Below, one piece after another: positions 2,794 through 21,978 of a stretch of 21,978 nucleotides of DNA (its first letter is position 1; each line of letters begins with the position of its first letter). The notes below the pieces were generated by a model that made no database searches, had not been told where the DNA came from, and was given only the letters and a program-made list of their open reading frames with translations. Made by a program: the position numbers and the translations under genes. This DNA comes from Macrostomum lignano (Eukaryota), in assembly GCA_002269645.1 (NCBI GenBank), contig NIVC01000243.1:1-21978 (forward strand). The letters are read 5' to 3'.

Positions 2794-2827
2794 ATGCGTT
2801 GTCTAGGCTTAGTCATAGTGAGCTTTG
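2794..2827 (+). CDS. Cysteine protease gene, coding exon 1 (signal peptide start MRCLGLVIVSF)
   Basis: ATG at 2794 and strong phase-1 donor TTTG|gtaagt. Joining to 3228 gives the hydrophobic leader MRCLGLVIVSFVLLQISGCASA. Confidence 0.8.
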
Positions 2828-4037: not shown

Positions 4038-4500
4038 GTGAATTCACATTCATACTTACTCAAAGTGTGATTCACAATCACCAGGTTTCGGTCCGGTTCA
4101 CACGAAAAACTTGAAAGTTTGGTATTCAGGCTAGCTTTTAGGTTACCCTTAGCTGGACCTGAGCCAAATCAGACTCAAACGATGTAAACCTATCTGGATT
4201 TTTGTATAGTAGCTTGCCAAGCATCTAAGGGTAAGTTATAGGGTATTCTGGATGTCGATGCTCAAAGGGGTGTTGATATCTTAAGCTAGTAGAAAGCTTG
4301 ATAATCGGAGTAATTCTTTACTGCTTTAAAAAATCTCAAGCTCTAGGAAACAAACAATAGAAAAGTATTTACCTTAGTGGTAAAGTAGTTTCCCTTCTTT
4401 TGTTGCCGCCACCTTTAGTAGTGTTAAACCGCCTACATGAATTTCTCTCGTATACTGTTACATCATGTTAGCATAGTTGCATTTGTTCAACATTTCACAG

Positions 4501-5313: not shown

Positions 5314-5578
5314 CTTATTGGAGTCTACGAGCGTATCTTGCTTCTAGTAGACGTTTGACCGTTTTCTAATGCAGTAAAGCAAATCATTAGGCTAGAGACT
5401 GACAAGAAGCAGCAATACTTTGATGCGTTAAGTATAGAAGCTATCTACTTGATTTTAATTTCCATTTTCCACCCATTTTACTAATTGATCATCCGTATTG
5501 CAAAAGGAATGAGTGAAACAGATCATTGTTGCGCTAATTCTAAAATAATTTTTGGCACTCAAGTTGAAGATTGATTAA

Positions 5579-5584
5579 AATAAA
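5579..5584 (+). promoter_or_regulatory. Candidate polyadenylation signal AATAAA for the protease gene
   Basis: AATAAA about 265 nt after the stop codon, followed by AT-rich sequence. It is a common hexamer in this composition. Confidence 0.4.
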
Positions 5585-6002
5585 GTTGAAAATGGTACTC
5601 CTATACATGTACTAAAAATTGTATTTTAATTATATTGTTTGTCGATTTCTAAATTGCCCAGCCAGTCTGAAAAGAGTCAAGCATTTTGATTTCTCCAATG
5701 GAAATAACTTTCTGGAAAGCTTCTTATCTTACGATATGTTGGTAGTTCAACCGCCGAGTCCCTACACTGGCCCAACGACTCCCGTAAATCTAGCCGCATC
5801 CATCCTCATAAAAAATTTAAATGTTTGCGACAGCTATAAATCTGGGTAATTTGCAAAGATTTAGACACTTTATTTATGCATCAGAAGGTTCAAAGCGTTC
5901 CATGTACTTGGCTTGTCTGTGGGGAGGCGTTAAAAATTAGTTACGTGCGGATAGCGTGCGGATGGCTTGTTTTTGGGGCTTAGGAATTTTAAGCTTTGGG
6001 CA

Positions 6003-6359
6003 ATTCTTGCGACAGTTGCTGATTCTTATAGTCCATCAAGTCCTGTAACCAAGGACAAATTCTCACAACTGGAAGTTCAATGGTTCGGTCAGCAGAGGAC
6101 TTTATATCCTTGCAAAAGAAGCTGTCGCAAATGCGCCAGTTTCTCAATTATACTCTTTGGACATCTGGCAATTGAAAATGCCAGCTGTCGCAATGTACAG
6201 CTCTGAAAAAGTCGAGTGTCGCAAGCGAAATAAAAAATTCGACATTTTTTAAAGTTTTAAAGTCCTCTGCTGACCGAACCATTGAACTTCCAGTTGTGAG
6301 AATTTGTCCTTGGTTACAGGACTTGATGGACTATAAGAATCAGCAACTGTCGCAAGAAT
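6003..6359. repeat. Perfect 102-bp inverted repeat (6003-6104 and 6258-6359) around a 153-bp spacer; foldback/MITE-like
   Basis: Base-by-base comparison shows the right arm is the exact reverse complement of the left arm. Confidence 0.95.
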
Positions 6360-6786
6360 GATCGAGACCGTCCTCTTATACAACGCCGAGACCTGGACGC
6401 TGATAGACTCGCTCGAGGCTCAAGTCGACGCGGCGGCGCCTTCAAGATCGGCAACGAGCGAGTCACCAACACGGCGCTCTATCATCGCGCTGGCCTGGCC
6501 CGTCCTAGCGATCTGCTGCGCCGTCGGCGACTCCAGCTGGTAGGCCACGTCATCCGCGCCGAGGCCTACTGTCCGGAGCCGGTGCAGGAGGTGCTGCTAC
6601 TTACGTTGCAGGCACCCTACCGGCGGGGACAGGCGAGGACTCGGCGCTACGTCGACTGTCTGCTGGCTGACGCCGGCGCCCCGGACTCTGCCGGCGGTGC
6701 GGCCTTTGTTCGCGCCCAAGCTTCGAAGCGCGCCATCTGACGCTGCTTTTGCGAACTGACAGCGTACTCTGTTGTTGTTGTTGTTG
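6360..6786 (+). mobile_element. 5'-truncated RTE-like non-LTR retrotransposon (ORF C-terminus, 3' UTR, (GTT)n tail)
   Basis: IETVLLYNAETWTL matches the post-RT motif of RTE-clade elements. After a small internal deletion the frame reads AFKIGNERVTNTALY...LLRRRRLQLVGHVIR...TGA (6738-6740). The tail tgttgttgttgttgttg spans 6770-6786. Confidence 0.85.
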
Positions 6787-8611
6787 GAATTGACATTGCA
6801 ATTTACACAGTAACCTGTGCATGAAAAAGAATATTTAATTTATTCCTTATCAACACATCCCTGCATTTATTTGCTGGCTATATAGTAAATATTTTCTGCA
6901 TTTTTGTCCTAAAGTTAAAAACTAGAGGCAAATGGGACTCTTGAATAATGCCGCGCTAAGTCACCGATTCAAACAAATTGTTTTTAGTGTTGCAGATTGT
7001 GAGGTTGATTTTCGATCAATTTTCAAGCCGGCACGAGAGTAAGTTCAAAGAATTTAATTAGTTATTGCGCTAAATTTCTGCAACAAATATTAGACCTTTA
7101 TAGCTTTTTAAAACTAAAGCTAAGAAAACAATCAAATTTTATTTTACCCTCCTCTACAGCGCTAAAAATTATGTACAAAATATTTGTTTGAAATGAAGCC
7201 TCCTAAAATCTTGCAAACGGAGGTTTCATTTTCTATGAAACAATCATTAAGTGTAGGCCTAATCCACGTGCAGCATTGTGACAGCAAGTAGGCCCAACGA
7301 CAAAAGTTAGCATTCTTAATATTTAGCTAAGTCTGCATTTCTGCTTTTCAAAATTGACCTAACAATCAAAATAAATCTGTAATAGGACATCATTCTGTGT
7401 ATAGTGTATCAAAGCAATATCAAAACAAGCAAAAAGCAAATGAGCAGAGTCACATAGTGCAATAGTCATACTATACTATAGTCATATAGGCTTTTCATAT
7501 TACCGTCATAATACCGATTCCAGAACCAGAATCGTGCAAATTAATACATCGTCTGACTTTTTCACTTTGGTTGTACATCATTGGATGTGTGTGCTAGGCC
7601 CTAGGGGCCTACCTAGTCAAATTACCAAGTGTAACTTTTGAAACAAGGCATTGGAGGATGATAGGCCTAGTCATGTTTGTTAGTTGCTTGATATTTAGGT
7701 GATGTTTTGATGATTCATATTAATTTTGTGATTGCAAAAATAATCAATTGATAATTGCTTGTTTAAAAAAAGACATGCAAAGTGCAAACATGTTTTATGA
7801 TAAATTTTATAATTGATTAGGCCTAATACTTAATAGGCTTTTCATATTACCAATTCCAGAACCAGACATGGTTCAAAGCTTTTCATATTGTCTATTCCAT
7901 TTTTAGAATCAGTTCCTAAATTGTGATCCAATTCTGGAATTCAGTTTGAGAAATTTACTCAATCCTGGTCAGATTGTCATATTCCATTTTGTCATATTGG
8001 ATGACGAAGTGACCAGAAGCAAAGTATCTTGAAAAATTAATTTGACAAAGTGACCAAATATTTAGTTATTCTAGATACTTCTTCATCAACCAATTAATCT
8101 GTGTGAGATCCGAGTTAGTATAAACCATTTTTTGTTTTTATTAACCACACTACTATTAAGCTGCAGCAAACAGAACTGATCGATTGATAGGTTTTATCAA
8201 TCGAGATGACAAAATGACTGGGATCATTAGGATTTCCAAGTAAATATGTTTGATTGCCACATTAATTCACTTGAATTTGGAACTATTGGTGGAAGACAAA
8301 AATGACTCTCTTCAGGTAGGCCTAGTGTATGCTAATTAGGCCTAAGATGATGAAGTAACCAAAGTTGAGGTGAACATTCCAGACACCCAGATGATGAAAT
8401 GGCAGATAACAAAATGACTAGGAACCTTCAAATAAGTCTTCCAATTGCAATTCTTATCCAATTATTCCAATTGGATACCATCTGGCATGGCAGTGCACCT
8501 AAGAAATTTGGTAGGTGCAGGTATAGGCAGATGTGTGCATGCGTAAGTGTGCTTAGTTATAGGTATCCCCATGTATATGTGGGCATGCGCACATGAGTGC
8601 ATGGCCTATGC

Positions 8612-8827
8612 CAGTAGTTCTCAACCTTTTTTCAGGTGACCTTAATTTATTCACTTGCAACTTGCATTGCATCATTTTTTAATGTTTGTAACCCCTTTTA
8701 TAATCAATATAATGCATCATTAAGTATGATATACTCATACAATGTTTATTATTTCTTAGTGTTGCAACCTCAAAAATGGTTATATAACCCCACTGGGGGT
8801 CATAACCCACAAGTTGAAAAACTACTG
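8612..8827. mobile_element. hAT (Charlie-like) MITE, 216 bp
   Basis: Termini CAGTAGTTCTCAACC and GTTGAAAAACTACTG. Subterminal GGGGTCATAACCCACA. 8-bp TSD GCCTATGC/GCCTATGT (7/8). These are typical hAT hallmarks. Confidence 0.88.
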
Positions 8828-9388
8828 GCCTATGTTCTATTTGCAAAATGAAAAGGCAAATGTTAAAATCTTAAAAAGTAATTAAAAATCCTAACATTCA
8901 ACATTATTAGCCAAATAGGGTTATTGTTTAGCCATTCTTTTTATCTCATACAATAAATGCTTAGATATAAAAATTTATTAATACTTAATTTATTAGGGAG
9001 GGCCTAATACTAAAAATGTAAATATAGTACAATTATTATTTATAATAAATTTTGTTAAATTGTATCATGTTTTTTAGAAATCATACATGCAAAACTGCTA
9101 GCTAATCTGGCCACTGTAAATTGTATTGGACTAGCAAGAAGTCACAAAAATGCTTACCCAAAAATAATATAGAGGTAGTACTAATTAGATAATGAGGCAT
9201 TTAGCCTTAATAAGACAGTTATAGTTGACTCTAGCCATTTACCTAGTTGCAAATGCACATAAGTAACTTAACTCTTTTCAGTCTTGCACAAGTGTCCAAG
9301 CCATTTATTCTGATATGCTGTGCAGGTGCAGCCCTTTGAAGTACCCCTGCATGGTGTCTATGGGTTTTGGTGATTATATTCCAATAGG

Positions 9389-9750
9389 GAGCCTCTTCAC
9401 GGCAATTGGTTCTAGAACCAGAATAAATTCGAGTTCTAGAACCAGAACCAGTGTGAAATAAGGAGCTTTGAACCCATTTTATGTTTGACAGTCTTTACAA
9501 TTTAATTTTGTCATTCTTTGACTTTGTTTCCTTTTGGATATGACAAAAAAGGATAATTTTATAACAATAATAAAAAAATTGATGATTTCAAATATATTTT
9601 ACTGTTAAAGTGTAAACATGACAACGGTTCAAGAAAATTTCTTGAACCATATTCTAGAACCAGAACCATGTTCCAGAACTGATTCTGTTTTTCAAACCAT
9701 CAATATGAAGAGCGTCGAACCAGTTTGGAACCGGCGATATGAAGAGGCTC
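9389..9750. mobile_element. MITE, 362 bp, with 11-bp TIR GAGCCTCTTCA and 3-bp TSD AGG
   Basis: Perfect 11-bp inverted ends flanked by agg on both sides. The interior is rich in GGTTCT/AGAACC motifs, including the palindromes GGTTCTAGAACC and ggttcaagaa-aat-ttcttgaacc. Confidence 0.6.
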
Positions 9751-10242
9751 AGGGTCAATCCTTTGTCATATTTCTTTCGAAACAATAGCCAATAGGACAA
9801 ATTTAAAATAATATTTCAAACATTTCAAAAAGAATACTGAAAGCTCAAAAGTGTAGGTCATAGTTTATAAAAAAAATGTTTTTTAACTTTTGAGAAGTAC
9901 TATAATTAAATACAAATAAAAAAATTGATGCTTTTCATTTTCCTACCAATTCTGGTTTTGGAATTGGAATTAATGTGGTTCTGGAACCAATCTTTGTGAA
10001 AAGCCTAATATAATATTTTTCTTGATCTTGGTTTGTTTCAAAAGCAAAAGTAAACATATTTATAATATATATAACAAGGCTGAATAGATTTGGATTGGGC
10101 CTAGCTAAATGTATTTCTAGAAAATAGCCAAACATGATTCTTTATATTGCCATCCTACTTACTAGGCCTAGGCTACTTACCTACTATAGAATATTAATGT
10201 ATAGGAGGGGCTACCTAACCTATGTTTTTAGATAGAGAAAAT

Positions 10243-10356
10243 AGTTTTTATTAGGTCTTATCCTACTGTATTTGTATTTATTTGTGTCTATATGTATTTA
10301 TAGTGTATTATATTTATTATAATACAAATACAATAGGATAAGACCTAATAAAAACT
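10243..10356. repeat. 36-bp inverted repeat (35/36 identical) with a 42-bp AT-rich spacer
   Basis: 10243-10278 agtttttattaggtcttatcctactgtatttgtatt pairs with 10321-10356, with one mismatch. Confidence 0.9.
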
Positions 10357-11303
10357 TTTTTATAAGAAAAGGTTTTTATTATTGTAAACAAGTTTTGACA
10401 ACAAAAAATCTATTTTTTTTAACACTACAAGTATACTTATATATACTATCCATATTATTTTATAGTCATTTTGTATAAATTTAAACGCCATAGTCAGGAA
10501 GAAGACATGTATGCTTTTTTCTAGAGTATATTCAAGAATTTTAGCATATATGTTTATACAAAAAGTTATTTTGGGCTTTTTGTATATGTATTTAATATTT
10601 TGATATATGATGTACCAAAAATACATTATCATTTTATCTATAATCTAGTCACAATAGTTGTCTAGATGCATATATATTATATAATCTTAACATTTGATAA
10701 CTATTTAACACTAAACTAACTTCCATGTTTTTACAAAGTAAGGATTTAAAAAATTAACAAAAAATGCACCAATTTTACTTTTGTTCTTTATTGTTTATAT
10801 AAAACATTATACAAAAATAACTATTATTTTTATTTTTAACTTTGTCTAATTGACAATTTAGAGCTTTGTGTAAGGTAATGTCTGTGTGTATCAGTGTAAA
10901 CCAAAAAAAAAGATTTTTTTCTACTTTCTACTTTTTCTACATATAGTGTTCTAAACTATAGATTAATTAATCTATTCCAAATGCATATATTAGCCAAATT
11001 GACCACACTAATCTATGTGGTATTGTACATAATGTATATAAGTCACACTTAAATCCATTATATATGCTAAAAATTATAGTTTATAAGCCATCTTAGAGAT
11101 TCTAGTCTAAAAATTAAAATCTCACTGAGATGCAGAACAATAGAAGTATTGGATGACTACATGTGTTGAGTGTCAGACTAGAAAAAGTTGAGCTAGACAT
11201 ATTTGGCAACTGTCTCATATTCCCTGCCTCTGTAACACCAAGAATACGGGAATCGCTCAGCGGCCCAAGACGGCAGGCAGGTCTTCCTTCACATCCAGCA
11301 CAA

Positions 11304-12201
11304 ATGGCCGACATATTTGTTGGCTGCGAGTTTCCAACCTATCGCGAACTGCAGGCAGCGGCGGATTGCCTGTCTGACGCCACTGGCAGCCGCCTAGTGA
11401 AGAGCACAGGCACCCGCAGCGCCGGCTGCCACAATTCCATAGTCAAAGCGCCCTACATGCGCATTGATGAGGCCAGTTTGCGCTACAGCTTCCTTAACTT
11501 GGCCTGTCCGCTGGCGCCAGACTGCCAGTTTGGCCTACGCGCCAAAGCCTGTCCGAAGCGCCAGGCGCTGGTTATTGTCCAGCTGTGCCTGGCGCACTCC
11601 GGACACGATTCCCCGGCCCTGTCGGCTGTCGGCCTGCGCGCTCTTGGCTCCATGGCGCTTCGGGAGGCCAGTCTGTGCGGCGACTTGCCAGCGGCGCGCC
11701 GCCTTCTGACTAGCGGCTATTCGGCCGACTCCGCCTGCCCCGCCACGGGCCTGGCGCCGTTGCACTGGGCCGCTATCGGCTGTCAGCCGGGCGCTATCCA
11801 GCTACTGTTGAAGGCCGGCGCCGATCCCGGCCAGACTGATTCGGCGGGACTGACGCCGAGAGATCGAGCTCGGGACCAAGCTACAATAGAGGCGCTGATG
11901 GTGGAACGACAGCCGTGCCTTAGTAGCAGCAGCGGGAGCTCCACGCCGACTGTGAGAAGAGCGGAGACACCGACCGCTGCTACGGCTTCCATCCAGGCTT
12001 CGTTCGCGGTGGAATCAGGCTCCGCTGGGGCTGACGTCACCGCTCCAGCGGCTCATGAGCAGCCGGATGCTGAGCTGCTGATGATGCTGAATCGCTGTCT
12101 ACAATGGCCTGTCTGACTGTGCCTGATTCATCGTTGGCTTTGCCAACCACTCCGCAGGCGGATACCAGTCAGTTGACAGATGGGCGACCAAACAGCGCCA
12201 G
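11304..12201 (+). CDS. Gene 2 exon 1: FAR1/WRKY-GCM1-type (ZSWIM3-N-like) zinc-finger domain, two ankyrin repeats and Ser/Ala/Thr linker; 1-nt deletion near 12074
   Basis: caaATGG start. VGCEFPTYREL...LRYSFLNLAC-x5-C-x23-H-x2-H (11304-11606). Ankyrin consensus LREASLCGD...LL..G and GLAPLHWAA..CQPGAIQLLLKAGADP...GLTP (about 11650-11900). The -1 frame from 12074 is open to the phase-2 donor GCCAG|gtgaga. Confidence 0.8.
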
Positions 12202-12998
12202 GTGAGATTTTGGTCTCAATTCCCACCCTAGTATGTAAGACCTATATATTATGTATAACAAAACCTACTTTTTTAATCGGGTAGTTTGGCCTTAAATCTT
12301 TATTTTTGTATCATTTATAAGTATTGTCTATCCACAGATAGCTAAAACCTATCCGATGAGAGGTTGTGTCACAATATGCATCTATTTTGGCTCCTTTTTA
12401 TTGAGACAGCCGGTATATTGCGCTAAAAAACAGTTACAACAATTATTGATTTTTTTCTTTTTCGCTTCCTCGCTCAAAATAACTGCTATTTTCTTTCCTT
12501 ACTACTGAATAGAATCTTGAACCTAAGAGCCTTAAATTATTTACAAATAGTATCCCGTGCTCATAAAGGTCTTATGTTTTATTGGGCCCAGGATTGCAAC
12601 AAGTTCATAAGCTGTGCTTTGTGGGACTTCGTCTATAATATTATATATTACTATTATTATTGTATGCAACTCACCATGGCAGTGGTCAATGACACCAATG
12701 GTTCCCCATAGCCACGACGAGGTAAAGCGGAAAGGAAGTGAAAGAAAACAAAAGGAGAGAATGGAAGGCGAACAAGACAAAGGAAAAAAGCCAAATGCTT
12801 CCATAATTTACAGTGTGCGGGGATGAAGCACTGCTTCTGTGGCTCTGCTCTAGAGAAAGGAAGCCTAAAGGAGAAGCTGGGCTGTTTGCTGCTAGAACGG
12901 AGACCATTAGGTGTGATTGTGGAGAGAGGAGCTGCTAGAGTTCACTGGAGCCTTTATTCTATAAGCATGATTTAATAAAATCTAATCCGTAACAACAG

Positions 12999-13381
12999 GC
13001 GTTCCAGCTCGAATTGTGGCGGCGAAATCAGGCAGCAGCGTCTGCGGCAGCCGCATTGCTCAGCCGGCAGCGGCAGCAGGCGCCGGCGCTGCCTGACGCC
13101 GTTCGAAATCGACCCCGAACGGCATTTGCGCTGTCCGGCCGCTGTCGCCGGCCATCCGACCGCGCTCCTTGCCGCTTGGCGGGCCGAGGCGCCTCGTTTA
13201 TTGGCTGAACGAGTCGCCGCGGGTGCCAGCGGTGCTGCCGGGGCGAACAAGGCCAGCCTGATCTGCTGTTGGCAGTGCGCCGGCGCTCTGCTAACTGGCC
13301 TGGAGGCCGCCACCGGGGCCAACCTGCTAGTGACTAACTCTGTGTCGATTGAGAGCTACTTATCCAGGCATCCGGGCTCTG
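12999..13381 (+). CDS. Gene 2 exon 2: linker and N-terminal half of a second FAR1/ZSWIM3-N-like domain
   Basis: Acceptor aacaacag|, GC-rich. The phase-2 entry gives an open frame throughout (RRSSSNCGG...LLTGLEAATGANLLVTNSVSIESYL). Phase-1 donor TCTG|gtaatt. Confidence 0.75.
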
Positions 13382-13464
13382 GTAATTGCTGGTTGTCTGT
13401 TGATGGTATTGAATTCAATAGCCAGTTACTATCAGTATCTGTTTTAGCTCGTTATGGTCTAACT

Positions 13465-13480
13465 CAGGGGTCGGCAAACC
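13465..13480 (+). mobile_element. Orphan hAT-like terminal inverted repeat CAGGGGTCGGCAAACC
   Basis: Matches the typical Charlie/MER58-type terminus and is preceded by the Charlie-like target gtctaact. No partner end was found. Confidence 0.45.
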
Positions 13481-13489
13481 CCGGGTTTG

Positions 13490-13568
13490 TCTCTTCTCGG
13501 CTCTCTTCTGTCTCCTCTTCTCTCTTCTCTCTTCTCCTCTTCTCTCTTCTCCTCTTCTCTCTCTCTCT

Positions 13569-13604
<36 letters not shown>

Positions 13605-16012
13605 TCCTCTTCTCTCTCTTCTCTCTTCTCTCTTCTCCTCTTCTCTCTTCTCCTCTTCTCTCTTCTCCTCTTCTCTCTTCTCTCTTCCCTCTTCTCCTCT
13701 TCTCTTCTCTCTTCTCCTCTTCTCTCTTCTCTCTTCTCCTCTTCTCTCTTCTCCTCTTCTCTCTTCTCTCTTCTCCTCTTCTCTCTTCTCTCTTCTCTCT
13801 TCTCTCTTCTCTCTTCTCTCTTCTCCTCTTCTCTCTTCTCCTCTTCTCTCTTCTCTCTTCTCCTCTTCTCTCTTCTCTCTTCTCTCTTCTCTCTTCTCTC
13901 TTCTCTCTTCCTCTTCTCTCTTCTCTCTTCTCTCTTCTCTCTTCTCTCTTCTCTCTTCTCTCTTCTCTCTTCTCCTCTTCTCTCTTCTCTCTCCTCTTCT
14001 CTCTTCTCTCTTCTCTCTTCTCTCTCTCTCTCTTCTCTCTTCTCTCTTCTCTCTTCTCCTCTTCTCTCTCTCTTCTCCTCTTCTCTCTTCTCCTCTTCTC
14101 TCTTCTCTCTTCTCCTCTTCTCTCTTCTCCTCTCCTCTTCTCTCTTCTCTCTTCTCTCTTCTCCTCTTCTCTCTTCTCTCTTCTCCTCTTCTCTCTTCTC
14201 CTCTTCTCTCTTCTCTCTTCTCTCTTCTCTCTTCTCCTCTTCTCTCTTCTCTTCTCTCTTCTCCTCTTCTCTCTTCTCTCTTCTCTCTTCTCTCTTCTCT
14301 CTTCTCCTCTTCTTTCTTCTCCTCTTCTCTCTTCTCTCTTCTCCTTTCTCTCTTCTCTCTTCTCTTCTCTCTCTTCTCTCTTCTCTCTTCTCTCTTCTCC
14401 TCTTCTCTCTTCTCTCTTCTCTCTTCTCTCTTTCTCTCCTCTTCTCTCTTCTCTCTTCTCTCTTCTCTCTTCTCTCTTCTCTCTTCTCTCTTCTCTCTTT
14501 CTCTTCTTCTTTCTCTTCTCTCTTCTCTCTTCTCTCTTCTCTCTTCTCTCTTCTCCTCTTCTCTCTTCTCTCTTCTCTCTTCTCTCTTCTCCTCTTCTCT
14601 CTTCTCTCTTCTCTCTTCTCTCTTCTCTCTTCTCTTCTCTCTCTCTCTTCTCTCTTCTCTCTTCTCTCTTCTCTCTTCTCCTCTTCTCTCTTCTCTCTTC
14701 TTTCTTCTCCTCTTCTCTCTTCTCTCTTCTCTGTTCTCTCTTCTCTCTCTCTCTTCTCTTCTCTCTTCTCTCTTCTCTCTTCTCTCTTCTCCTCTTCTCT
14801 CTTCTCCTCTTCTCTCTTCTCTCTTCTCTCTCCTCTTCTCTCTTCTCCTCTTCTCTCTTCTCTCTTCTCCTCTTCTCTCTTCTCTCTTCTCCTCTTCTCT
14901 CTTCTCCTCTTCTCTCTTCTTCTCTTCTCTCTTCTCTCTTCTCCTCTTCTCTCTTCTCTCTTCTCCTCTTCTCTCTTCTCCTCTTCTCTCTTCTCTCTTC
15001 TCTCTTCTCTCTTCTCCTCTTCTCTCTTCTCCTCTTCTCTCTTCTCTCTTCTCTCTCCTCTTCTCTCTTCTCCTCTTCTCTCTTCTCTCTTCTCCTCTTC
15101 TCTCTTCTCCTCTTCTCTCTTCTCCTCTTCTCTCTTCTCCTCTTCTCCTCTTCTCTCTTCTCCTCTTCTCTCTTCTCTCTTCTCTCTTCTCTCTTCTCCT
15201 CTTCTCTCTTCTCTTCTCTCTTCTCCTCTTCTCTCTTCTCTCTTCTCTCTTCTCTCTTCTCCTCTTCTCTCTTCTTTCTTCTCTTCTCTCTTCTCTCTTC
15301 TCCTCTTCTCTCTTCTCTCTTCTCCGCTTCTCCTCTTCTCTCTTCTCTCTTCTCTCTTCTCCTCTTCTCTCTTCTCCTCTTCTCTCTTCTCTCTTCTCTC
15401 TCCTCTTCTCTCTTCTCCTCTTCTCTCTTCTCTCTTCTCTCTTCTCCTCTTCTCCTCTTCTCTCTTCTCTCTTCTCCTCTTCTCTCTTCTCTCTTCTCCT
15501 CTTCTCTCTTCTCCTCTTCTCTCTTCTCTCTCTCTCTCTCCTCTTCTCTCTTTTCCTCTTCTCCTCTTCTCTCTTCTCCTCTTCTCTCTTTTCCTCTTCT
15601 CTCTTTTCCTCTTCTCTCTTTTCCTCTTCTCTCTTCTCTCTTCTCCTCTTCTCTCTTCTCTCTTCTCCTCTTCTCTCTTCTCTCTTCTCCTCTTCTCCTC
15701 TTCTCTCTTCTCCTCTTCTCCTCTTCTCTCTTCTCTCTTCTCCTCTTCTCTCTTCTCTCTTCTCCTCTTCTCTCTTCTCCTCTTCTCTCTTTTCCTCTTC
15801 TCTCTTTTCCTCTTCTCTCTTCTCTCTTTTCCTCTTCTCTCTTCTCTCTTCTCTTCTCTCTTCTCCTCTTCTCTCTTCTCTCTTTTCCTCTTCTCTCTTT
15901 TCCTCTTCTCTCTTCTCTCTTCTCCTCTTCTCTCTTCTCTCTTCTCTTCTTTCTTCTCTTCTCTCTTCTCTTCTCTCTCCTCCCCTTCTCTCTTCTCCTC
16001 TTCTCATCTCTC
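13490..16012. repeat. About 2.5-kb homopyrimidine CT satellite (mixed TTCTC, TTCTCTC and TTCTCCTC units) in intron 2 of gene 2
   Basis: Directly visible. Only two purines (G14733, G15326) were spotted between 13511 and 16005. Confidence 0.99.
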
Positions 16013-16310
16013 GCTGTACACCCTGTGTGAGCGTGTATGAGTGCCGTGCCTGCGTACAGTATTAGAGGGCTTGTATTGTGCTCAGGAGTCAGCGGAATGG
16101 GCAGAATTGCCTCAGCGATCTCGTCGAAGGCGTTAGGCCAGGGTGTCCGCAGCCTTGCCATTGTTGTGAGGCCTCCCATCTTCTAGCTTTCTTATTGTAG
16201 CAAGTCCGCTATCTTCCCAGTGTGACCCATTGTTTTGACATCGCTATCCCCCAAATTCCCCATTTTCATCGGTTAAAATAATTTTTTTACTGTCTTTCAA
16301 AATTTCACAG

Positions 16311-16518
16311 GTAGATTGGCCGATCTAATTCATCTAAAATATGCCCAGGTGTTTGTGCTGTGCGATCATTCGCCTAGGCTGGGCCATCGCAGGCCTACTA
16401 GGCTGCCCAGGGCCAGGCTGAACTGTCCATTTCAGCTGGTGCTACGCCTTGCCGCTGCTCAGCGGGCTCTGTACGTGGCGGCTCACAGCAGTTTGGAGCA
16501 CAACCATCCTGTGGGCAG
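16311..16518 (+). CDS. Gene 2 exon 3: zinc-ligand half of the second FAR1/ZSWIM3-N-like domain
   Basis: Strong acceptor ctttcaaaatttcacag| in phase 1, matching the donor at 13381. Reads LKYAQVFVLC-x20-CPFQLVLRL...LYV...EHNH (C-x20-C-x24-H-x-H). Phase-2 donor GGCAG|gtgaga. Confidence 0.82.
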
Positions 16519-16529
16519 GTGAGATTTTT

Positions 16530-17885
16530 GGCCGCTATCTGCCAGTGTCCATTGTAGTGAGGCCGCTATCTGCCAGTGTCCATTGTAGTGAGGCCGCTAT
16601 CTGCCAGTGTCCATTGTAGTGAGGCCGCTATCTGCCAGTGTCCATTGTAGTGAGGCCGCTATCTGCCAGGGTCCATTGTAGTGAGGCCGCTATCTGCCAG
16701 TGTCCATTGTAGTGAGGCCGCTATCTGCCAGTGTCCATTGTAGTGAGGCCGCTATCTGCCAGTGTCCGTTGTAGTGAGGCCGCTATCTGCCAGTGTCCGT
16801 TGTAGTGAGGCCGCTATCTGCCAGTGTCCATTGTAGTGAGGCCGCTATCTGCCAGTGTCCGTTGTAGTGAGGCCGCTATCTGCCAGTGTCCATTGTAGTG
16901 AGGCCGCTATCTGCCAGGCGTCCATTGTAGTGAGGCCGCTATCTGCCAGTGTCCATTGTAGTGAGGCCGCTATCTGCCAGTGTCCATTGTAGTGAGGCCG
17001 CTATCTGCCAGTGTCCATTGTAGTGAGGCCGCTATCTGCCAGTGTCCGTTGTAGTGAGGCCGCTATCTGCCAGTGTCCATTGTAGTGAGGCCGCTATCTG
17101 CCAGGGTCCATTGTAGTGAGGCCGCTATCTGCCAGTGTCCGTTGTAGTGAGGCCGCTATCTGCCAGTGTCCATTGTAGTGAGGCCGCTATCTGCCAGTGT
17201 CCATTGTAGTGAGGCCGCTATCTGCCAGTGTCCGTTGTAGTGAGGCCGCTATCTGCCAGTGTCCATTGTAGTGAGGCCGCTATCTGCCAGTGTCCATTGT
17301 AGTGAGGCCGCTATCTGCCAGTGTCCATTGTAGTGAGGCCGCTATCTGCCAGTGTCCGTTGTAGTGAGGCTGCTATCTGCCAGTGTCCATTGTAGTGAGG
17401 CCGCTATCTGCCAGTGTCCATTGTAGTGAGGCCGCTATCTGCCAGTGTCCATTGTAGTGAGGCCGCTATCTGCCAGTGTCCATTGTAGTGAGGCCGCTAT
17501 CTGCCAGTGTCCATTGTAGTGAGGCCGCTATCTGCCAGTGTCCATTGTAGTGAGGCCGCTATCTGCCAGTGTCCGTTGTAGTGAGGCCGCTATCTGCCAG
17601 TGTCCATTGTAGTGAGGCCGCTATCTGCCAGTGTCCATTGTAGTGAGGCCGCTATCTGCCAGTGTCCGTTGTAGTGAGGCCGCTATCTGCCAGTGTCCAT
17701 TGTAGTGAGGCCGCTATCTGCCAGTGTCCATTGTAGTGAGGCCGCTATCTGCCAGTGTCCATTGTAGTGAGGCCGCTATCTGCCAGTGTCCGTTGTAGTG
17801 AGGCCGCTATCTGCCAGTGTCCATTGTAGTGAGGCCGCTATCTGCCAGTGTCCGTTGTAGTGAGGCTGCTATCTGCCAGTGTCCA
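16530..17885. repeat. 31-bp minisatellite, type A (GAGGCCGCTATCTGCCA-GTGTCCATTGTAGT), about 43-44 copies
   Basis: Near-identical tandem units. Recurring variants are ccgttg, gggtcc and ggctgct. Confidence 0.99.
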
Positions 17886-18406
17886 TAATTGAGAGGCCGC
17901 TTTCTCCCATGATCCCTAATTGTGAGGCCGCTATCTGCCATGATCCCCAATTGTGAGGCCGCTATCTGCCATGATCCCCAATTGTGAGGCCGCTATCTGC
18001 CATGATCCCCAATTGTGAGGCCGCTATCTGCCATGATCCCCAATTGTGAGGCCGCTATCTGCCATGATCCCTAATTGTGAGGCCGCTATCTGCCATGATC
18101 CCCAATTGTGAGGCCGCTATCTGCCATGATCCCTAATTGTGAGGCCGCTATCTGCCATGATCCCTAATTGTGAGGCCGCTATCTGCCATGATCCCTAATT
18201 GTGAGGCCGCTATCTGCCATGATCCCTAATTGTGAGGCCGCTATCTGCCATGATCCCTAATTGTGAGGCCGCTATCTGCCATGATCCCTAATTGTGAGGC
18301 CGCTATCTGCCATGATCCCTAATTGTGAGGCCGCTATCTGCCATGATCCCTAATTGTGAGGCCGCTATCTGCCATGATCCCTAATTGTGAGGCCGCTTTC
18401 TCCCAG
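17886..18406. repeat. 31-bp minisatellite, type B (GAGGCCGCTATCTGCCA-TGATCCC(T/C)AATTGT), about 16-17 copies
   Basis: Same 17-bp core and period as type A with a different second half. The sub-array is bounded at both ends by a ctttctccca variant. Confidence 0.98.
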
Positions 18407-18432
18407 CGTCCCCAAGTATGAGGCTGCCCCAG

Positions 18433-19351
18433 GCACACATGTACACACGAGCCGCAAACCACAGCATCGCCGACCCTACTGAAACCGCCTGCCCGCAGGC
18501 CAGCCGACCGGCTCAGCCGCCGGGTTGGCTACAGCCGTCTCGGCACCCAACGCTTGCAGCCGTCGAGGTCGTCGCAGCCTCGGTCACCACCACCGGAGGA
18601 TGTCGGCGTCGATTTCAACCTGGCCGACGGAGACTCCGCCGTCGACGACACCGAAGGCGTGGCCAACATTGGCGTCTGCTTTGACTTGGCCGCCGCCGAT
18701 GACCAACGGCGTAGAATGAAGACAGCCTACCCCATTGTGCCGTTCGCGCCGCCAGAGATGCGTATAGTAAAGTTTATGGCTATGGGATTTCGTCAGGATG
18801 GGCGCCAAGATGAAGCTACGCAGCAGGTGCTGCAGCAGCGTCCAAGGCCGCCGAGGAAACCGCAGCAGCAGCAGCAGCCGTCGCCGTGGCCGGCTGCTTC
18901 AGTCCGTTGGAGCGATCGAGCGGGTTTCCCGTGCCTAAAAGTTTATCGCGGCGGAGCGGCACAAAGCGGAGCCGCTGTCCCGGCTGTTGTGACTGCCGTT
19001 CCGGGCCGATGCGGTGCAGCTCAGCAGCAGCCGGGTGTCTCCCAGAGACCTGGTGCGCTCAGCCTGTTGGCAACTGCTCAGAAGCAGCCAGTTGATCCTC
19101 AGATTCAGAAGCTCTGGGACATCGGCGAGTCCGACTTAACGGCAGCTACAGATTCCGCGGCCACGGCGACAGTCCGTCTGAAGTGGCCGGATCCGACTTG
19201 TCCGCTTGGATTGTCCGCCTGTCTGACAGTTGAGCAAATATTAATCAACAAAATCATTTTTGGCGCCTCGCATTTCTGCTGCCGATTGGCCTGTATGTAC
19301 AATATTAACTTAATTGCATGCAGTAGCAGCAGACTTCTACAGACTTCCTAG
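18433..19351 (+). CDS. Gene 2 probable last exon: low-complexity Pro/Gln/Ala-rich and acidic C-terminus
   Basis: GC-rich frame open from 18422 to TAG at 19351. The AG at 18431-18432 gives the phase-2 join required by exon 3, but its pyrimidine tract is weak. The repaired four-exon CDS is 2409 nt (802 aa). The last ~40 codons are AT-richer and doubtful. Confidence 0.55.
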
Positions 19352-19579
19352 TCTTTCAGTGACACTGCCAGCCTGAGAACTGCTTTGCTGGTGCATAGTT
19401 TTGCTTTCAAAATGCTTTTCATAACTCCTGTTAATTTATTTCTCTACAGTTGCATTTTGGTGTATAGTTGCAGCATTAAAGTACAGAACTAATTTTCATT
19501 TGAATTTCTTTCGCTTGTCTTTTTCTTTTCAGTTTTTCTGCCAAGAAGAAATACATCCTTTTTTCTTGTATTGAGTACA

Positions 19580-20638
19580 AGATCCCCAGTTGCTGGGCCA
19601 GCCTCCCAGATCCTCAGTTGCCGGGCCAGCCTCCCAAATCCTCAGTTGCCAAGCCAGCCTCCAAATCCTCAGTTGCTGGGCCAGCCTCCCAGATCCTCAG
19701 TTGCCGGGCCAGCCTCCCAGATCCTCAGTTGCTGGGCCAGCCTCCCAGATCATCAGTTGCTGGGCCAGCCTCCCAGATCATCAGTTGCTGGGCCAGCCTC
19801 CCAGATCATCAGTTGCTGGGCCAGCCTCCCAGATCAGCTGGGCCATCTCCCAGATCAGCTGGGCCAGCCTCCCAGATCAGCTGGGCCAGCCTCCCGGATC
19901 CTCAGTTACTGGGCCAGCCTCCCAGATCCTCAGTTGCTGGGCCAGCCTCCCAGATCCTCAGTTGCTGGGCCAGCCTCCCAGATCCTCAGTTGCTGGGCCA
20001 GCCTCCCAGATCCTTAGTTAACTGGGCCAGCCTCCCAGATCCTCAGTTGCTAAGCCAGCCTCCCAGATCCTCAGTTGCTAAGCCAGCCTCCCAGATCCTC
20101 AGTTGCTAAGCCAGCCTCCCAGATCCTCAGTTGCTGGGCCAGCCTCCCAGATCCTCAGTTGCCGGGCCAGCCTCCCAGATCCTCAGTTGCTGGGCCAGCT
20201 CCCAGATCATCAGTTGCTGGGCCAGCCTCCCAGATCATCAGTTGCTGGGCCAGCCTCCCAGATCATCAGTTGCTGGGCCAGCCTCCCAGATCATCAGTTG
20301 CTGGGCCAGCCTCCCAGATCATCAGTTGCTGGGCCAGCCTCCCAGATCATCAGTTGCTGGGCCAGCCTCCCAGATCATCAGTTGCTGGGCCAGCCTCCCA
20401 GATCAGCTGGGCCAGCCTCCCAGATCAGCTGGGCCATCCCCAGATCAGCTGGGCCAGCCTCCCAGATCAGCTGGGCCAGCCTCCCAGATCAGCTTGGCCA
20501 GCCTCCCAGATCCTCAGTTGCTGGGCCAGCCTCCCAAATCCTCAGTTGCCGAGCCAGCCTCCCAAATCCTCAGTTGCTGGGCCAGCCTCCCAAATCCTCA
20601 GTTGCTGGGCAGCCTCCCAGATCCTCAGTTACTGGCCC
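19580..20638. repeat. 28-bp minisatellite (GCTGGGCCAGCCTCCCAGATCCTCAGTT) with 22-bp deletion variants, about 40 copies
   Basis: Directly visible. Variants are catcag, caaatc, gctaag and the 22-mer GCTGGGCCAGCCTCCCAGATCA. Confidence 0.98.
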
Positions 20639-21215
20639 GATTTTCAGACATTTAAATTAAACTATTTGTAAAAAAACGAACGGCAAAAAGGCTTTTATTT
20701 GTGTTGTATCAGCAACAAAACAAACATAAGTATATGCAAAACTAGCATTTGTAGCTGTGGCATTCAAGAATTTATTCAAACTAATATCAATCAAGATCCA
20801 CCTTGACACCTTTCAATCATTTGTCATTTTACATTCGCAGCCAAGTCTGCTTGATTTGGCGGAAAAGTTCAATTTTGTGGGTTAAGCGAAAGTTAAATGG
20901 CTGAGCGTGAACGATAGGTAATGCTTAGTAAAATTCAGACGCGGCCGATATGTGCAGTTTTTTTCTTTACGCGTCAAATGAAAATGCATGGCAATTTGAA
21001 TCAATTTGTCGTAGTTTTTGCCTGCGGCTTCTTATCTGTAAACTTGTAGCACGGAAGAACTGAAGGGCACTCTTGGCGGTCAGTCGTGATGGTGCTCCTT
21101 GCCGGATACTTCTGAAATTAATGGGATTGAAGAGTTTGTCCTTCAGTTGTACGATTCTTTACATTTCTATCATTGAGTCTGCTGGATTTATGTAGTTTTA
21201 GTCCAGGGTCTAGAT

Positions 21216-21531
21216 AGGATCAGCGTCTGGTAGCATCTTTGTACTTTTGCCCAGGGTAGCACTTTTGTACTTTTACTCAAGGACAATAGCATTTTCGTAC
21301 GCTCGTACTTTTACCCCAGGATCAGCTGGTAGCATTTCGTACTTTTACCCAGGATCAGCTGTAGCATTTTCGTACTTTTACCCCAGGATCAGCTGCTAGC
21401 ATTTTCGTACTTTTACCCAGGATCAGCTGGTAGCATTTTGTACTTTTACCCCAGGATCAGCTGGTAGCATTTTCGTACTTTTACCCCAGGATCAGCTGCT
21501 AGCATTTTTGTACTTTTACCCCAGGATCAGC
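21216..21531. repeat. About 35-bp minisatellite (TAGCATTTTCGTACTTTTACCCCAGGATCAGCTGG), about 7 good copies plus degenerate 5' copies
   Basis: Directly visible. Units differ mainly in T-run and C-run length. Confidence 0.93.
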
Positions 21532-21978
21532 AGTATTTTTCAGGACAGGAATTTTCAGGGTTCACCCAGTCTCAGGTTGTTAATTATGGGAGGTAGCGCA
21601 TGTGTCGCCGCAGATGTGTGCAGTCAGTTAAACGCTATTAGAACAAAACCAAATTCAATCTAGTTATTTAAACCACAAATTTGCTATAGTCTACAATTAT
21701 TTCAAATTGTTTACGCTCGTATTAGTACACAAATTCCAAACTCGCCTATTATAGTAAGCCACTGCAAGTTCTACGAGCGTGGTTGCCTCACCTTGTGGCC
21801 TATTTATTAATTGGTGACACCTGTGAAAAATAATTTTTACAGGTAAAATAATAACTTACATATTGCTGCACAGTTGTTCTGGTTTATTATATGCTTTATT
21901 TGCCCCGTGCTCCCCGAGTTCAATTTTTCCTGAATATCATGCGACATCACGAGCGGGTCGAATAATTGGAGAAGTGGG

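What the first reader, a model, noticed from the sequence alone, without database searches (positions are those of the whole stretch)
11304..19351. Spliced gene encoding two Mutator/FAR1-type zinc-finger domains flanking ankyrin repeats: candidate new domesticated-transposase regulator
Seen: four exons whose splice phases chain correctly (2, 1, 2) after one base is restored, giving about 802 aa. Domain 1 has G.EFPTY.EL...T...L...Y..L.L.C-x5-C-x23-H-x2-H. Two ankyrin repeats follow. Domain 2, split by the CT-satellite intron, has LE..TG..L...NSVSI...LKY..V...C-x20-CPF.L.LR...LYV...EHNH. The tail is Pro/Gln-rich and acidic. Established: this C-C-H-H pattern ending in HxH characterises the WRKY-GCM1 fold of MULE transposase N-termini, FAR1/FHY3 and ZSWIM3. 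Inference: no DDE or SWIM region and no TIRs are visible, so this looks like a host transcription or chromatin factor built from duplicated transposase DNA-binding modules plus ankyrins. I do not recognise this architecture from any named gene, but novelty is unverified. ORF callers would report only an unrelated 317-aa ankyrin ORF.
Basis: partly seen in the sequence, partly recalled or inferred. Interest (0 to 1): 0.85.

Follow-up and report, generated by a model that had tools for sequence, protein, structure and literature searches.

The report
Flatworm gene with two transposase-derived zinc fingers
The window holds one of four near-identical copies of an expressed Macrostomum lignano (flatworm) gene, already in GenBank as a "hypothetical protein", whose product joins two DNA-binding zinc-finger domains of the kind used by Mutator transposases to ankyrin repeats; it is probably a lineage-specific gene regulator, an ordinary kind of transposon domestication in an unusual arrangement.

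Summary
The window is a whole 21,978-bp contig of Macrostomum lignano (GCA_002269645.1). One of these, PAA87201.1 (766 aa as deposited), carries the full architecture. The restored base after 12073 is present in all three other copies.

Two corrections apply:
- Exon 4 starts at 18499, not 18433.
- The window copy has further indels (18920, 18934, 19166), so the true end is ...RLSDS* at 19233. The protein is 742 aa, not 802.

Both Cys/His domains match a profile of DUF5575_N/ZSWIM3_N/FAR1-type repeats (hhalign 89% and 74%; 0 of 2000 shuffles reach either score). Models of both have yeast Aft2, a WRKY-GCM1 DNA-binding domain, as top PDB match, but with weak E-values. Curated Pfam models find only the ankyrin repeats. 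No transposase core, SWIM or TIRs were found. All four copies are collinear with the same cathepsin neighbour, and pN/pS is about 0.37.

Best reading: a lineage-restricted host gene for a DNA-binding regulator built from MULE-derived modules. Function is inferred, not shown. It is a new variant of a known kind, of moderate interest.

The parts
11304..12201 (+). Exon 1. Starts at ATG 11304 and ends at donor CAG|gtgaga. Encodes zinc-finger domain 1, the ankyrin repeats and an acidic Ser/Thr/Ala-rich linker. The window copy lacks one G after 12073, which creates the false stop at 12114-12116.
   Evidence: tblastn of P0125; exon mapping in four copies; indel located
11304..11609 (+). Domain 1 (aa 1-102): WRKY-GCM1-like zinc finger with short Cys spacing, C68-x5-C74-x23-H98-x2-H101. 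It resembles DUF5575_N/ZSWIM3_N.
   Evidence: phmmer hit to P0122, E 1.9e-7; HMM 20.6-26.3 bits with 0 of 2000 shuffles reaching it; hhalign 88.9%, E 2.4e-6, 93 columns; AF2 pLDDT 59 with top fold hit Aft2 4LMG
11634..11900 (+). Ankyrin repeats (aa ~111-199): two full repeats plus a capping half-repeat.
   Evidence: Pfam Ank 27.1 bits, E 4.6e-6; Ank_4 25.9 bits; the same in P0125
12202..12998 (+). Intron 1 (797 nt, AT-rich, gt..ag). In paralog L002 an A>G change 6 nt upstream of the acceptor creates a second AG, which the annotated transcript uses (Ser-Asn insertion in P0125).
12999..13381 (+). Exon 2: basic/Ala-rich linker and the N-terminal half of domain 2 (from 13258).
13382..16310 (+). 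Intron 2, which splits domain 2. It contains the (CTCTCTT)n satellite at 13501-16005.
   Evidence: TRF; junction confirmed by P0121 and P0125 spanning it
16311..16518 (+). Exon 3: C-terminal half of domain 2 (to 16510). C-x20-C with a basic insert (6 Arg, 2 His), then CPFQLVLRL...EHNH. This is the insert-containing, FAR1/Aft-type WRKY-GCM1 finger.
   Evidence: hhalign 73.7%, E 2.9e-5; HMM 15.1 bits with 0 of 2000 shuffles reaching it; AF2 pLDDT 77.7, pTM 0.69; Foldseek top hit Aft2, prob 0.97; insert composition; no substitution among the four copies
16519..18498 (+). Intron 3, almost entirely a 31-bp minisatellite (about 60 copies, 16530-18411). The annotated acceptor is cgcag|G at 18498/18499.
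18499..19233 (+). Exon 4: tail with an acidic block, a Q/P-rich stretch and no recognised domain. The stop is TGA at 19231-19233 once the window-specific indels are allowed for (-4 nt after 18920, +1 at 18934, -1 after 19166).
   Evidence: no Pfam hit; no homologs found

Best explanation
The locus is one of four near-identical subgenomic copies of a single expressed host gene of Macrostomum lignano. The intact form is PAA87201.1 on locus L002: 742 aa from the first Met to the stop, in 4 exons.

Architecture of the protein:
- an N-terminal WRKY-GCM1-type zinc finger of the short-spacer DUF5575_N/ZSWIM3_N kind;
- two to three ankyrin repeats;
- a ~190-aa low-complexity linker;
- a second, more basic WRKY-GCM1 finger of the insert-containing FAR1/Aft kind (pI 9.6);
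- a ~230-aa tail with an acidic block and a Q/P-rich stretch.

Both fingers are the DNA-binding module that Mutator-like (MULE) transposases carry at their N-terminus. The catalytic RNaseH-like/DDE core, the SWIM finger and the TIRs are absent.

Most likely mechanism (inferred, not shown). The two fingers each chelate a zinc ion through C,C,H,H and bind DNA through their beta-sheets, as Aft2, WRKY and FAR1 do. The ankyrin repeats recruit protein partners. The acidic/Q-rich tail acts as an effector (activation-type) region. The protein would then be a lineage-restricted, transposase-derived transcription or chromatin factor.

The window copy itself reads as broken, with four small indels in this gene and two in the neighbouring cathepsin gene. 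This is more likely consensus error in a small PacBio-based contig than true pseudogenisation, but the question is not settled.
For: Shown: identity and gene model.
- The window equals a 21,978-bp M. lignano contig.
- Exon structure and junctions are identical to the RNA-seq-derived models P0121 and P0125. The GenBank annotation is StringTie/RNA-seq-based, and transcripts overlapping repeats were removed (PMC5730564).
- A copy-specific A>G change creates the alternative acceptor used in P0125.
- L002 has an intact 742-aa CDS.

Shown: host-gene behaviour.
- All four loci are collinear at ~98-99% identity through intergenic DNA, with the same upstream I29+C1 cathepsin gene.
- This matches the three ~98%-alike subgenomes of this assembly (PMC10733133).
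- No flanking inverted repeats were found.
- Among the copies there are 15 synonymous and 16 nonsynonymous changes. pN/pS is 0.37, binomial p=0.006 against neutrality. Domain 2 has 0 changes and domain 1 has 2 synonymous and 1 nonsynonymous.

Shown: domain identity.
- phmmer over 1.84 billion representatives finds, outside M. lignano, only a caecilian protein built of DUF5575_N/ZSWIM3_N/FAR1 + RNaseH-like units.
- A profile of those repeats hits both domains at the C..C..H.H cores. The scores exceed all 2000 shuffles.
- hhalign gives 88.9% and 73.7% probability.
- The AF2 models have a beta-alpha-beta...beta-beta-beta topology.
- The Foldseek PDB top hit for both is the Aft2-DNA complex 4LMG, prob 0.82 and 0.97, TM about 0.45.
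- Aft2, FAR1 and MULE transposases form the insert-containing WRKY-GCM1 family, with a basic insert between the two Cys (PMC1702500). Domain 2 has exactly such an insert (20 aa, 6 Arg).
- Ankyrin repeats are found by Pfam.
- An HMM of the whole MULE-derived unit finds no RNaseH-like or C-terminal remnant.
- MULEs occur in Platyhelminthes (PMC6446971).
Against: - Curated Pfam models (FAR1, ZSWIM3_N, DUF5575_N, FLYWCH, WRKY) give no hit to either domain, even at E<=10.
- Foldseek E-values are 0.1-0.3 and TM about 0.45. The AF2 inputs were 7-8-row alignments made from the hypothesised family, so the fold result is not independent. Domain 1 has a mean pLDDT of only 59.
- The phmmer E-value to P0122 sums seven similar repeats.
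- Domain 1 has an atypical H-x2-H.
- No ortholog outside M. lignano was found, so there is no deep conservation.
- The pN/pS rests on 31 changes between very recent copies. Some of them may be sequencing errors.
- Three of four copies are frameshifted as assembled.
- No expression pattern, DNA-binding or phenotype data were found.
Confidence: 0.6

Rival explanations
1. A young, transcribed but functionless or decaying lineage-specific gene. It would be a chimera of MULE DNA-binding fragments and an ankyrin fragment that is expressed and spliced but has no selected role. The frameshifts in three of four copies would be real.
For: - It is an orphan. No homolog outside M. lignano was found except a distant caecilian MULE-derived protein.
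- Three of four copies are frameshifted as assembled.
- More than half of the protein is low-complexity.
- The exons carry more substitutions per base than the flanks.
Against: - One copy is fully intact over 742 codons and 3 splice junctions.
- All indels are private to single copies. They also hit the conserved neighbouring cathepsin gene. They pile up near a contig end in L001. This is the pattern expected of long-read consensus errors.
- There is an excess of synonymous changes, p=0.006.
- Both finger domains are nearly invariant.
Confidence: 0.2
2. The gene is functional, but the WRKY-GCM1-like modules no longer bind DNA. They would serve as protein- or RNA-binding zinc modules in an ankyrin scaffold protein.
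For: - Domain 1 is nearly neutral (pI 8.2), has the atypical H-x2-H and gives a low-confidence model.
- Ankyrin repeats are protein-interaction modules.
- No curated DNA-binding family model matches.
Against: - Domain 2 is basic (pI 9.56) and has the Arg-rich inter-cysteine insert that is proposed to contact the DNA backbone in this family.
- The best structural match for both domains is a DNA-bound Aft2 domain.
- All characterised members of the family named here bind DNA (established knowledge; PMC1702500).
Confidence: 0.1
3. The locus is part of an unrecognised mobile element, for example a non-autonomous or Pack-MULE-like element or an accessory gene of a large transposon. The four copies would then be transposed copies.
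For: - The DNA-binding modules are of transposase type.
- The genome is very repeat-rich, and the region contains satellites and a 115-nt hairpin repeat.
- Two copies lie on one scaffold.
Against: - All copies share about 10 kb or more of collinear flanks on both sides, including the same cathepsin gene.
- The copy number equals what subgenome redundancy predicts.
- No TIRs flank the gene and there is no transposase core.
- The annotation pipeline discarded transcripts that overlap repeats.
Confidence: 0.05
4. The four-exon model is an annotation artefact. Two adjacent genes, an ankyrin gene and a downstream zinc-finger gene, would have been merged from a polycistronic, trans-spliced precursor.
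For: - M. lignano has polycistronic precursors; about 7% of transcripts are of this kind.
- The models P0121, P0123 and P0124 each cover only part of the gene.
Against: - In L002 one ORF runs in frame through all three junctions without a stop.
- P0123 and P0125 both join exon 1 to exon 2.
- Each partial model ends or starts exactly at a frameshift in its own copy.
Confidence: 0.03

Closest known systems
Stand-alone MULE-derived WRKY-GCM1 transcription factors (yeast Aft1/Rcs1 and Aft2, Candida Rbf1), the 'insert-containing family' of Babu et al. 2006 (PMC1702500)
   Same: - A WRKY-GCM1-type C..C..H.H finger without any transposase domain.
- Domain 2 has the basic 20-residue insert between the two cysteines.
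- The Aft2-DNA complex (4LMG) is the best PDB fold match of both domains.
- The origin is lineage-restricted and recent.
   Different: - There are two fingers of different subtypes in one protein, separated by ankyrin repeats.
- The host is an animal (flatworm).
- No sequence-level match to Aft or Rbf was found.
- No iron-sensing Cys motif or other known effector region is present.
- The function is untested.
Vertebrate DUF5575 / ZSWIM1 / ZSWIM3-type domesticated MULE proteins (e.g. Rhinatrema LOC115080765, XP_029441023.1)
   Same: - This is the only detectable sequence relative of domain 1 outside M. lignano (E 1.9e-7).
- The whole N-domain aligns, with F10, L59, Y61, C68, C74, P84, L89, H98 and H101 invariant.
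- Several fingers occur in one polypeptide.
   Different: - Those proteins keep the RNaseH-like core and the C-terminal domain after every finger. The flatworm protein has neither.
- Identity is only about 20-27%.
- Pfam models of these families do not reach the flatworm domains.
- Those proteins have no ankyrin repeats.
Plant FHY3/FAR1/FRS transposase-derived transcription factors
   Same: - A FAR1-type finger with a long C-C spacer and a terminal HNH, as in domain 2.
- A domesticated MULE origin.
- An activation-type region elsewhere in the protein.
   Different: - FHY3/FAR1 retain the MULE core and the SWIM finger. Neither is present here.
- Pfam FAR1 gives no hit.
- The kingdom is different, so the domestication event is independent.
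FLYWCH-type multi-finger proteins (Mod(mdg4), vertebrate FLYWCH1, C. elegans PEB-1)
   Same: - The same superfamily.
- Tandem or multiple WRKY-GCM1 fingers occur in one animal protein, combined with a protein-interaction module (POZ there, ankyrin here).
   Different: - No FLYWCH signature and no Pfam hit.
- The fingers here carry the N-terminal beta-alpha-beta extension of the MULE/FAR1 type.

Membership tests
WRKY-GCM1 zinc-finger superfamily | Two Cys around the strand 2/3 turn and two His (or His/Cys) at the end of strand 4, as zinc ligands. | tested here: met
   Domain 1 is C68-x5-C74-x23-H98-x2-H101. Domain 2 is C-x20-C-x24-H-x-H. All four ligand columns are invariant in alignments with DUF5575_N repeats. 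The H-x2-H of domain 1 is atypical.
WRKY-GCM1 zinc-finger superfamily | Four-stranded antiparallel beta-sheet core, and a structural match to solved members. | tested here: inconclusive
   The AF2 models show the expected strands: domain 1 pLDDT 59, domain 2 pLDDT 78. The Foldseek top hit for both is Aft2 4LMG (prob 0.82 and 0.97, TM about 0.45), and WRKY18 appears lower in the domain 1 list. However, E is 0.1-0.3, and the input alignments came from the hypothesised family.
MULE/FAR1-type ('insert-containing') WRKY-GCM1 family, including ZSWIM3_N and DUF5575_N | Significant match to the curated family models (Pfam PF03101 FAR1, PF21599 ZSWIM3_N, PF20783 DUF5575_N). | tested here: not met
   hmmscan finds no hit for either domain at E<=10.
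MULE/FAR1-type ('insert-containing') WRKY-GCM1 family, including ZSWIM3_N and DUF5575_N | Profile-level homology to bona fide members over the whole domain, including the N-terminal beta-alpha-beta extension. | tested here: met
   The reference was a profile of caecilian repeats that Pfam itself calls DUF5575_N/ZSWIM3_N/FAR1. hhalign gives 88.9% (93 columns) for domain 1 and 73.7% (70 columns) for domain 2. The HMM scores are 26.3 and 15.1 bits, against a shuffle maximum of 9.6 and 6.8 over 2000 shuffles each.
MULE/FAR1-type ('insert-containing') WRKY-GCM1 family, including ZSWIM3_N and DUF5575_N | A 20-70-residue positively charged insert between the two Cys (PMC1702500). | tested here: met
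   Domain 2 has a 20-residue insert with 6 Arg, 2 His and 1 Asp. Domain 1 has only 5 residues there, like the caecilian DUF5575_N repeats.
WRKY-GCM1 zinc-finger superfamily | Zinc binding and sequence-specific DNA binding. | not testable with these tools
   This needs biochemistry (ICP/PAR assay, EMSA, DAP-seq).
Mutator-like transposable element (autonomous or non-autonomous) | A DDE/RNaseH-like transposase core. | tested here: not met
   There is no Pfam MULE, ZSWIM1-3_RNaseH-like or DUF5575 hit in the 766-aa protein. An HMM of the whole caecilian unit matches only the finger segments.
Mutator-like transposable element (autonomous or non-autonomous) | Terminal inverted repeats (and TSDs) bounding the unit. 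| tested here: not met
   An inverted-repeat search of 9000-21978 finds only short AT-rich pairs. None brackets the gene.
Mutator-like transposable element (autonomous or non-autonomous) | Dispersed copies in unrelated genomic contexts. | tested here: not met
   The four copies found are collinear with the window over their whole fetched length and share the neighbouring genes. A whole-genome nucleotide search could not be run.
FHY3/FAR1/FRS and ZSWIM1/3 domesticated transposases | Finger + MULE core + SWIM zinc finger in one protein. | tested here: not met
   Only the finger part is present. No MULE core and no SWIM domain were found.
Ankyrin-repeat proteins | At least one repeat above the Pfam gathering score. 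| tested here: met
   PF00023 scores 27.1 bits against a cut-off of 21.1. PF13637 scores 25.9 against 22.7.

The most novel reading that the evidence does not exclude
A recently born, Macrostomum-restricted transcription or chromatin regulator. It would have been assembled from two independently captured MULE DNA-binding fingers (one DUF5575_N/ZSWIM3_N-like, one FAR1/Aft-like) and a host ankyrin module. It would be kept under purifying selection in all subgenomes. This would be a fresh animal example of transposase-to-regulator domestication, in an organism where transgenesis and RNAi can test it. One possible role is recognition of the sequences of the donor transposon family or of the abundant satellites.
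Probability: 0.4. Interest if true: 0.5.

Novelty: new variant of a known kind. Interest (0 to 1): 0.38.

Why it matters
Transposase DNA-binding domains repeatedly become host transcription factors (FAR1/FHY3, Aft1/2, Rbf1, ZSWIM, FLYWCH). Animal cases are mostly uncharacterised. This gene shows an arrangement not listed in the superfamily survey consulted (PMC1702500): two different MULE-type fingers around ankyrin repeats, with the transposase core gone. It belongs to a flatworm model that has RNAi and transgenesis, so the step from transposon module to regulator could be tested directly.

It also has practical value. The GenBank entries are unannotated 'hypothetical proteins'. Three of the four are truncated by single-base indels that probably reflect assembly errors.

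The claim is limited. There is no ortholog, expression pattern or binding data, so the function is inferred only.

Tried and rejected
1. The search for homologous proteins with the whole exon-1 ORF. Ankyrin proteins swamped the list, so it was uninformative.
2. The same tool with the alignment of domain 1 plus caecilian repeats, and with the 246-aa tail. Neither gave a hit. The tool did not return even the M. lignano cluster, so these negatives are weak.
3. Pfam on every segment at E<=10. Only Ank was found.
4. PDB sequence search with both domains. Nothing relevant was found.
5. BLASTP of domain 1 against domain 2. There was no alignment, so an internal duplication was not shown.
6. Exact look-up of the 317-aa ORF. 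It is not on record, because the annotated product starts at a different residue.
7. Literature and supplement searches for Mlig022608, Mlig016874 and Mlig004464, for DUF5575, and for WRKY-GCM1 plus ankyrin. No expression or functional data were found, and no prior description of the architecture.
8. Pfam on putative TE-like ORFs at 1710-2150(-) and 6327-6737(+). There were no hits, so they are not called.
9. Transposon reading. Rejected on synteny, absence of TIRs and absence of a core.
10. Merged-gene artefact. Rejected on the continuous ORF in L002.

Full report
**What the window is**

[quoted passage not shown] A 295-aa NCBI protein (P0124) identical to the exon-1 ORF sits on a contig of exactly this length. 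Its cluster mates are M. lignano proteins PAA87197.1 (P0121), PAA87224.1 (P0123) and PAA87201.1 (P0125).

The window also holds other features:
- a papain-type cathepsin gene with an I29 propeptide at about 3143-5310;
- AT-rich intergenic DNA at 23-34% GC, against 54-59% GC in the exon-bearing stretches of the target gene;
- several satellites.

**Checking the observation**

- P0125 (766 aa as deposited, 5'-partial) carries the whole architecture: domain 1, ankyrin repeats, linker, domain 2 and tail.
- tblastn of P0125 and exon-by-exon mapping place exons at 11304-12201, 12999-13381, 16311-16518 and 18499-19233 in the window. All introns are GT..AG.
- With the equivalent coordinates, locus L002 gives an uninterrupted 742-codon CDS from MADIF to RLSDS*.
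A G present in the other three copies is missing after 12073.
- The phases 2, 1, 2 are right.

Two corrections are needed.
- The annotated exon-4 acceptor is 18498/18499, not 18432/18433.
- The window copy has three further indels in exon 4: -4 after 18920, +1 at 18934 and -1 after 19166.

Other elements of the observation hold.
- Ankyrin repeats are confirmed by Pfam (27.1 bits).
- Intron 2 carries a 2.5-kb (CTCTCTT)n array. Intron 3 is a 31-bp x 60 minisatellite.

**Are the junctions real?**

The GenBank annotation of Mlig_3_7 was derived from a genome-guided RNA-seq assembly (StringTie/TACO plus TransDecoder). Transcripts overlapping repeat annotation were removed (PMC5730564). The models therefore reflect transcripts, not ab initio prediction.

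One detail supports this. In L002 a copy-specific A>G change 6 nt upstream of the exon-2 acceptor creates a new AG. The L002 model (P0125) uses it, adding Ser-Asn, whereas P0121 uses the acceptor found in the window.

The partial models are explained by frameshifts private to each copy:

| Copy | Indels in the CDS |
|---|---|
| L001 | seven single-base indels in exon 1, which lies 1.2-2.1 kb from a contig end |
| L003 | one indel in exon 2 |
| Window | four small indels |

In the window the neighbouring, conserved cathepsin gene is also broken by two 1-bp gaps, at 3825 and 5043, relative to L002. Between the window and L002, small indels are as frequent as substitutions (49 each in 12.2 kb). 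This pattern suggests consensus errors in a PacBio/Canu assembly rather than decay, but I could not test it with reads.

**Host gene or transposon?**

- All four loci are collinear with the window over their whole fetched length at about 98-99% identity, including intergenic DNA and introns.
- L002 and L003 have the same I29/C1 cathepsin gene upstream. L001 and L003 share a 266-aa gene downstream.
- The assembly is known to contain three subgenomes about 98% alike at small scale (PMC10733133) and 180 Mb of duplicated non-repetitive blocks. Three to four copies is the expectation for a single-copy gene.
- No inverted repeats bracket the gene.
- Pfam finds no MULE, RNaseH-like or SWIM domain.
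- An HMM of the complete caecilian MULE-derived unit matches P0125 only at the two finger cores.
- Among the four copies there are 15 synonymous and 16 nonsynonymous changes. pN/pS is 0.37, and the excess of synonymous changes has p=0.006. Domain 2 is invariant and domain 1 has 2 synonymous and 1 nonsynonymous change. The numbers are small and the copies very young, so this is supportive only.

**What are the two Cys/His domains?**

Curated models fail. No Pfam family other than Ank hits, even at E<=10, and PDB sequence searches are empty.

An exhaustive phmmer search of domain 1 plus domain 2 against 1.84 billion representatives found only two proteins:
- the M. lignano cluster, matched across the exon 2/3 junction;
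- a 3186-aa protein of the caecilian Rhinatrema (P0122), E 1.9e-7, matching domain 1 residues 57-104.

Pfam shows P0122 to be a tandem array of DUF5575_N/ZSWIM3_N/FAR1 finger + RNaseH-like + C-terminal units, that is, domesticated MULE units.

Further tests with the caecilian repeats gave consistent results.
- A profile of its finger repeats hits both flatworm domains exactly at the C..C..H.H cores.
- Domain-only scores are 26.3 and 15.1 bits. The maxima over 2000 composition-matched shuffles are 9.6 and 6.8.
- hhalign gives 88.9% (E 2.4e-6, 93 columns) for domain 1 and 73.7% (E 2.9e-5, 70 columns) for domain 2.
- MAFFT aligns both domains end to end with the repeats, with the four ligand columns invariant.

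Structure prediction points the same way, weakly.
- AlphaFold2 on these small alignments gave a low-confidence model for domain 1 (pLDDT 59) and a fair one for domain 2 (pLDDT 77.7, pTM 0.69). Both have a beta-alpha-beta...beta-beta-beta topology.
- Foldseek against the PDB ranks the yeast Aft2-DNA complex (4LMG) first for both (prob 0.82 and 0.97, TM about 0.45, 92-106 columns). WRKY18 appears lower in the domain 1 list. E-values are only 0.1-0.3.

Babu et al. 2006 place Aft2/Rcs1, Rbf1, FAR1 and related MULE transposases in one 'insert-containing' WRKY-GCM1 family. Its mark is a 20-70-residue basic insert between the two cysteines (PMC1702500). Domain 2 has such an insert (20 aa, 6 Arg) and is basic (pI 9.56).

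I conclude that both are MULE-type WRKY-GCM1 fingers. Confidence is good for the sequence relationship and moderate for the fold. The fold evidence is not independent of the family hypothesis, because the alignments fed to AlphaFold came from that family.

**Are they duplicates of each other?**

This is not shown. BLASTP finds no alignment between them. They share 18% identity in the family alignment. They differ in Cys spacing (5 vs 20) and His spacing (H-x2-H vs H-x-H). Domain 1 looks like the short-spacer DUF5575_N/ZSWIM3_N type and domain 2 like the FAR1/Aft type. Two captures or one old duplication are both possible.

**Mechanism (inferred)**

- Two zinc-stabilised beta-sheet fingers bind DNA.
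- The ankyrin repeats between them bind partner proteins.
- An acidic block (net -8 over residues 521-560) and the Q/P-rich tail provide an effector region.
- Linker residues 241-280 are also strongly acidic, and 281-330 are basic (RRRR), possibly a nuclear localisation signal. This last point is unverified.

None of this is tested. No paper or supplement I could search mentions these gene ids.

**Comparison and novelty**

The kind is well known: a stand-alone, MULE-derived WRKY-GCM1 protein that has lost the transposase. Examples are Aft1/2, Rbf1 and many uncharacterised animal proteins (PMC1702500). MULEs occur in flatworms (PMC6446971).

Three things differ here:
- the combination of two different finger subtypes with ankyrin repeats, which is absent from that survey ('ankyrin' occurs 0 times);
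- the failure of curated models to recognise either finger;
- the apparent restriction to M. lignano.

The gene is not undiscovered, because the full protein is in GenBank as 'hypothetical'. I rate it a new variant of a known kind, with moderate interest (0.38). The best explanation has confidence 0.6.

Noticed in passing
window 3143-5310 (+): A cathepsin-like cysteine protease gene: a long N-terminal extension, the I29 propeptide and Peptidase_C1, with one intron at about 4041-4500. The window copy is broken by two 1-bp gaps (after 3825 and 5043) relative to the intact 595-aa gene in L002. This is the same indel problem as in the target gene.
   Followed up: partly
window 1251-13480 vs L002: Substitutions are about 4x denser in exons 1-2 of the target gene (16 in 1281 bp) than in the rest of the aligned 12.2 kb (33 in about 10.9 kb). 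Nine of them fall in 140 bp (11846-11984), just after the ankyrin repeats. The cause is unexplained: CpG-rich coding DNA, gene conversion of the flanks, or a chimeric assembly.
   Followed up: no
window 16530-18411 and 13501-16005: Two introns of the gene are almost wholly satellites: a 31-bp unit x about 60 at 97% identity, and 2.5 kb of (CTCTCTT)n. BLAST offsets suggest that the array lengths differ between the paralogous copies.
   Followed up: no
window 4-764; 19580-20635; 21303-21531: Further tandem arrays: a 21-bp unit x 35 (higher-order periods 128 and 327) at the contig start; a 28-bp unit x 40 starting about 350 bp after the stop codon; and a 35-bp unit x 6.7.
   Followed up: no
window 6003-6117 / 6245-6359: A 115-nt inverted repeat, 96% complementary, with a 127-nt spacer. 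It looks like a MITE or hairpin. It lies directly upstream of a GC-rich ORF fragment (6327-6737) that resembles the C-terminus of a retroelement protein by eye but has no Pfam hit.
   Followed up: partly
L002 11753-11758 (equivalent to window 12993-12998): A copy-specific A>G change creates a second AG acceptor 6 nt upstream. The annotated L002 transcript uses it, adding Ser-Asn. The subgenomic copies therefore differ in splicing.
   Followed up: yes
tail, window ~18740-18830 (aa ~575-605 of the 742-aa protein): The segment PPEMRIVKFMAMGFRQDGRQDEATQQVLQQ contains an 'MGF' motif reminiscent of UBA domains. No Pfam hit was found at E<=10, so this is only a lead.
   Followed up: partly
P0122 / P0126 (Rhinatrema bivittatum LOC115080765): A caecilian protein of 3186-3768 aa consists of seven tandem complete MULE-derived units (finger + RNaseH-like + C-domain). 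This is an unusual concatenation of domesticated transposase units in one ORF.
   Followed up: no
tool behaviour: the search for homologous proteins never returned the M. lignano cluster P0121/P0123/P0124/P0125, although these proteins are in its collection. Its negative results for this gene family should be read with caution.
   Followed up: no
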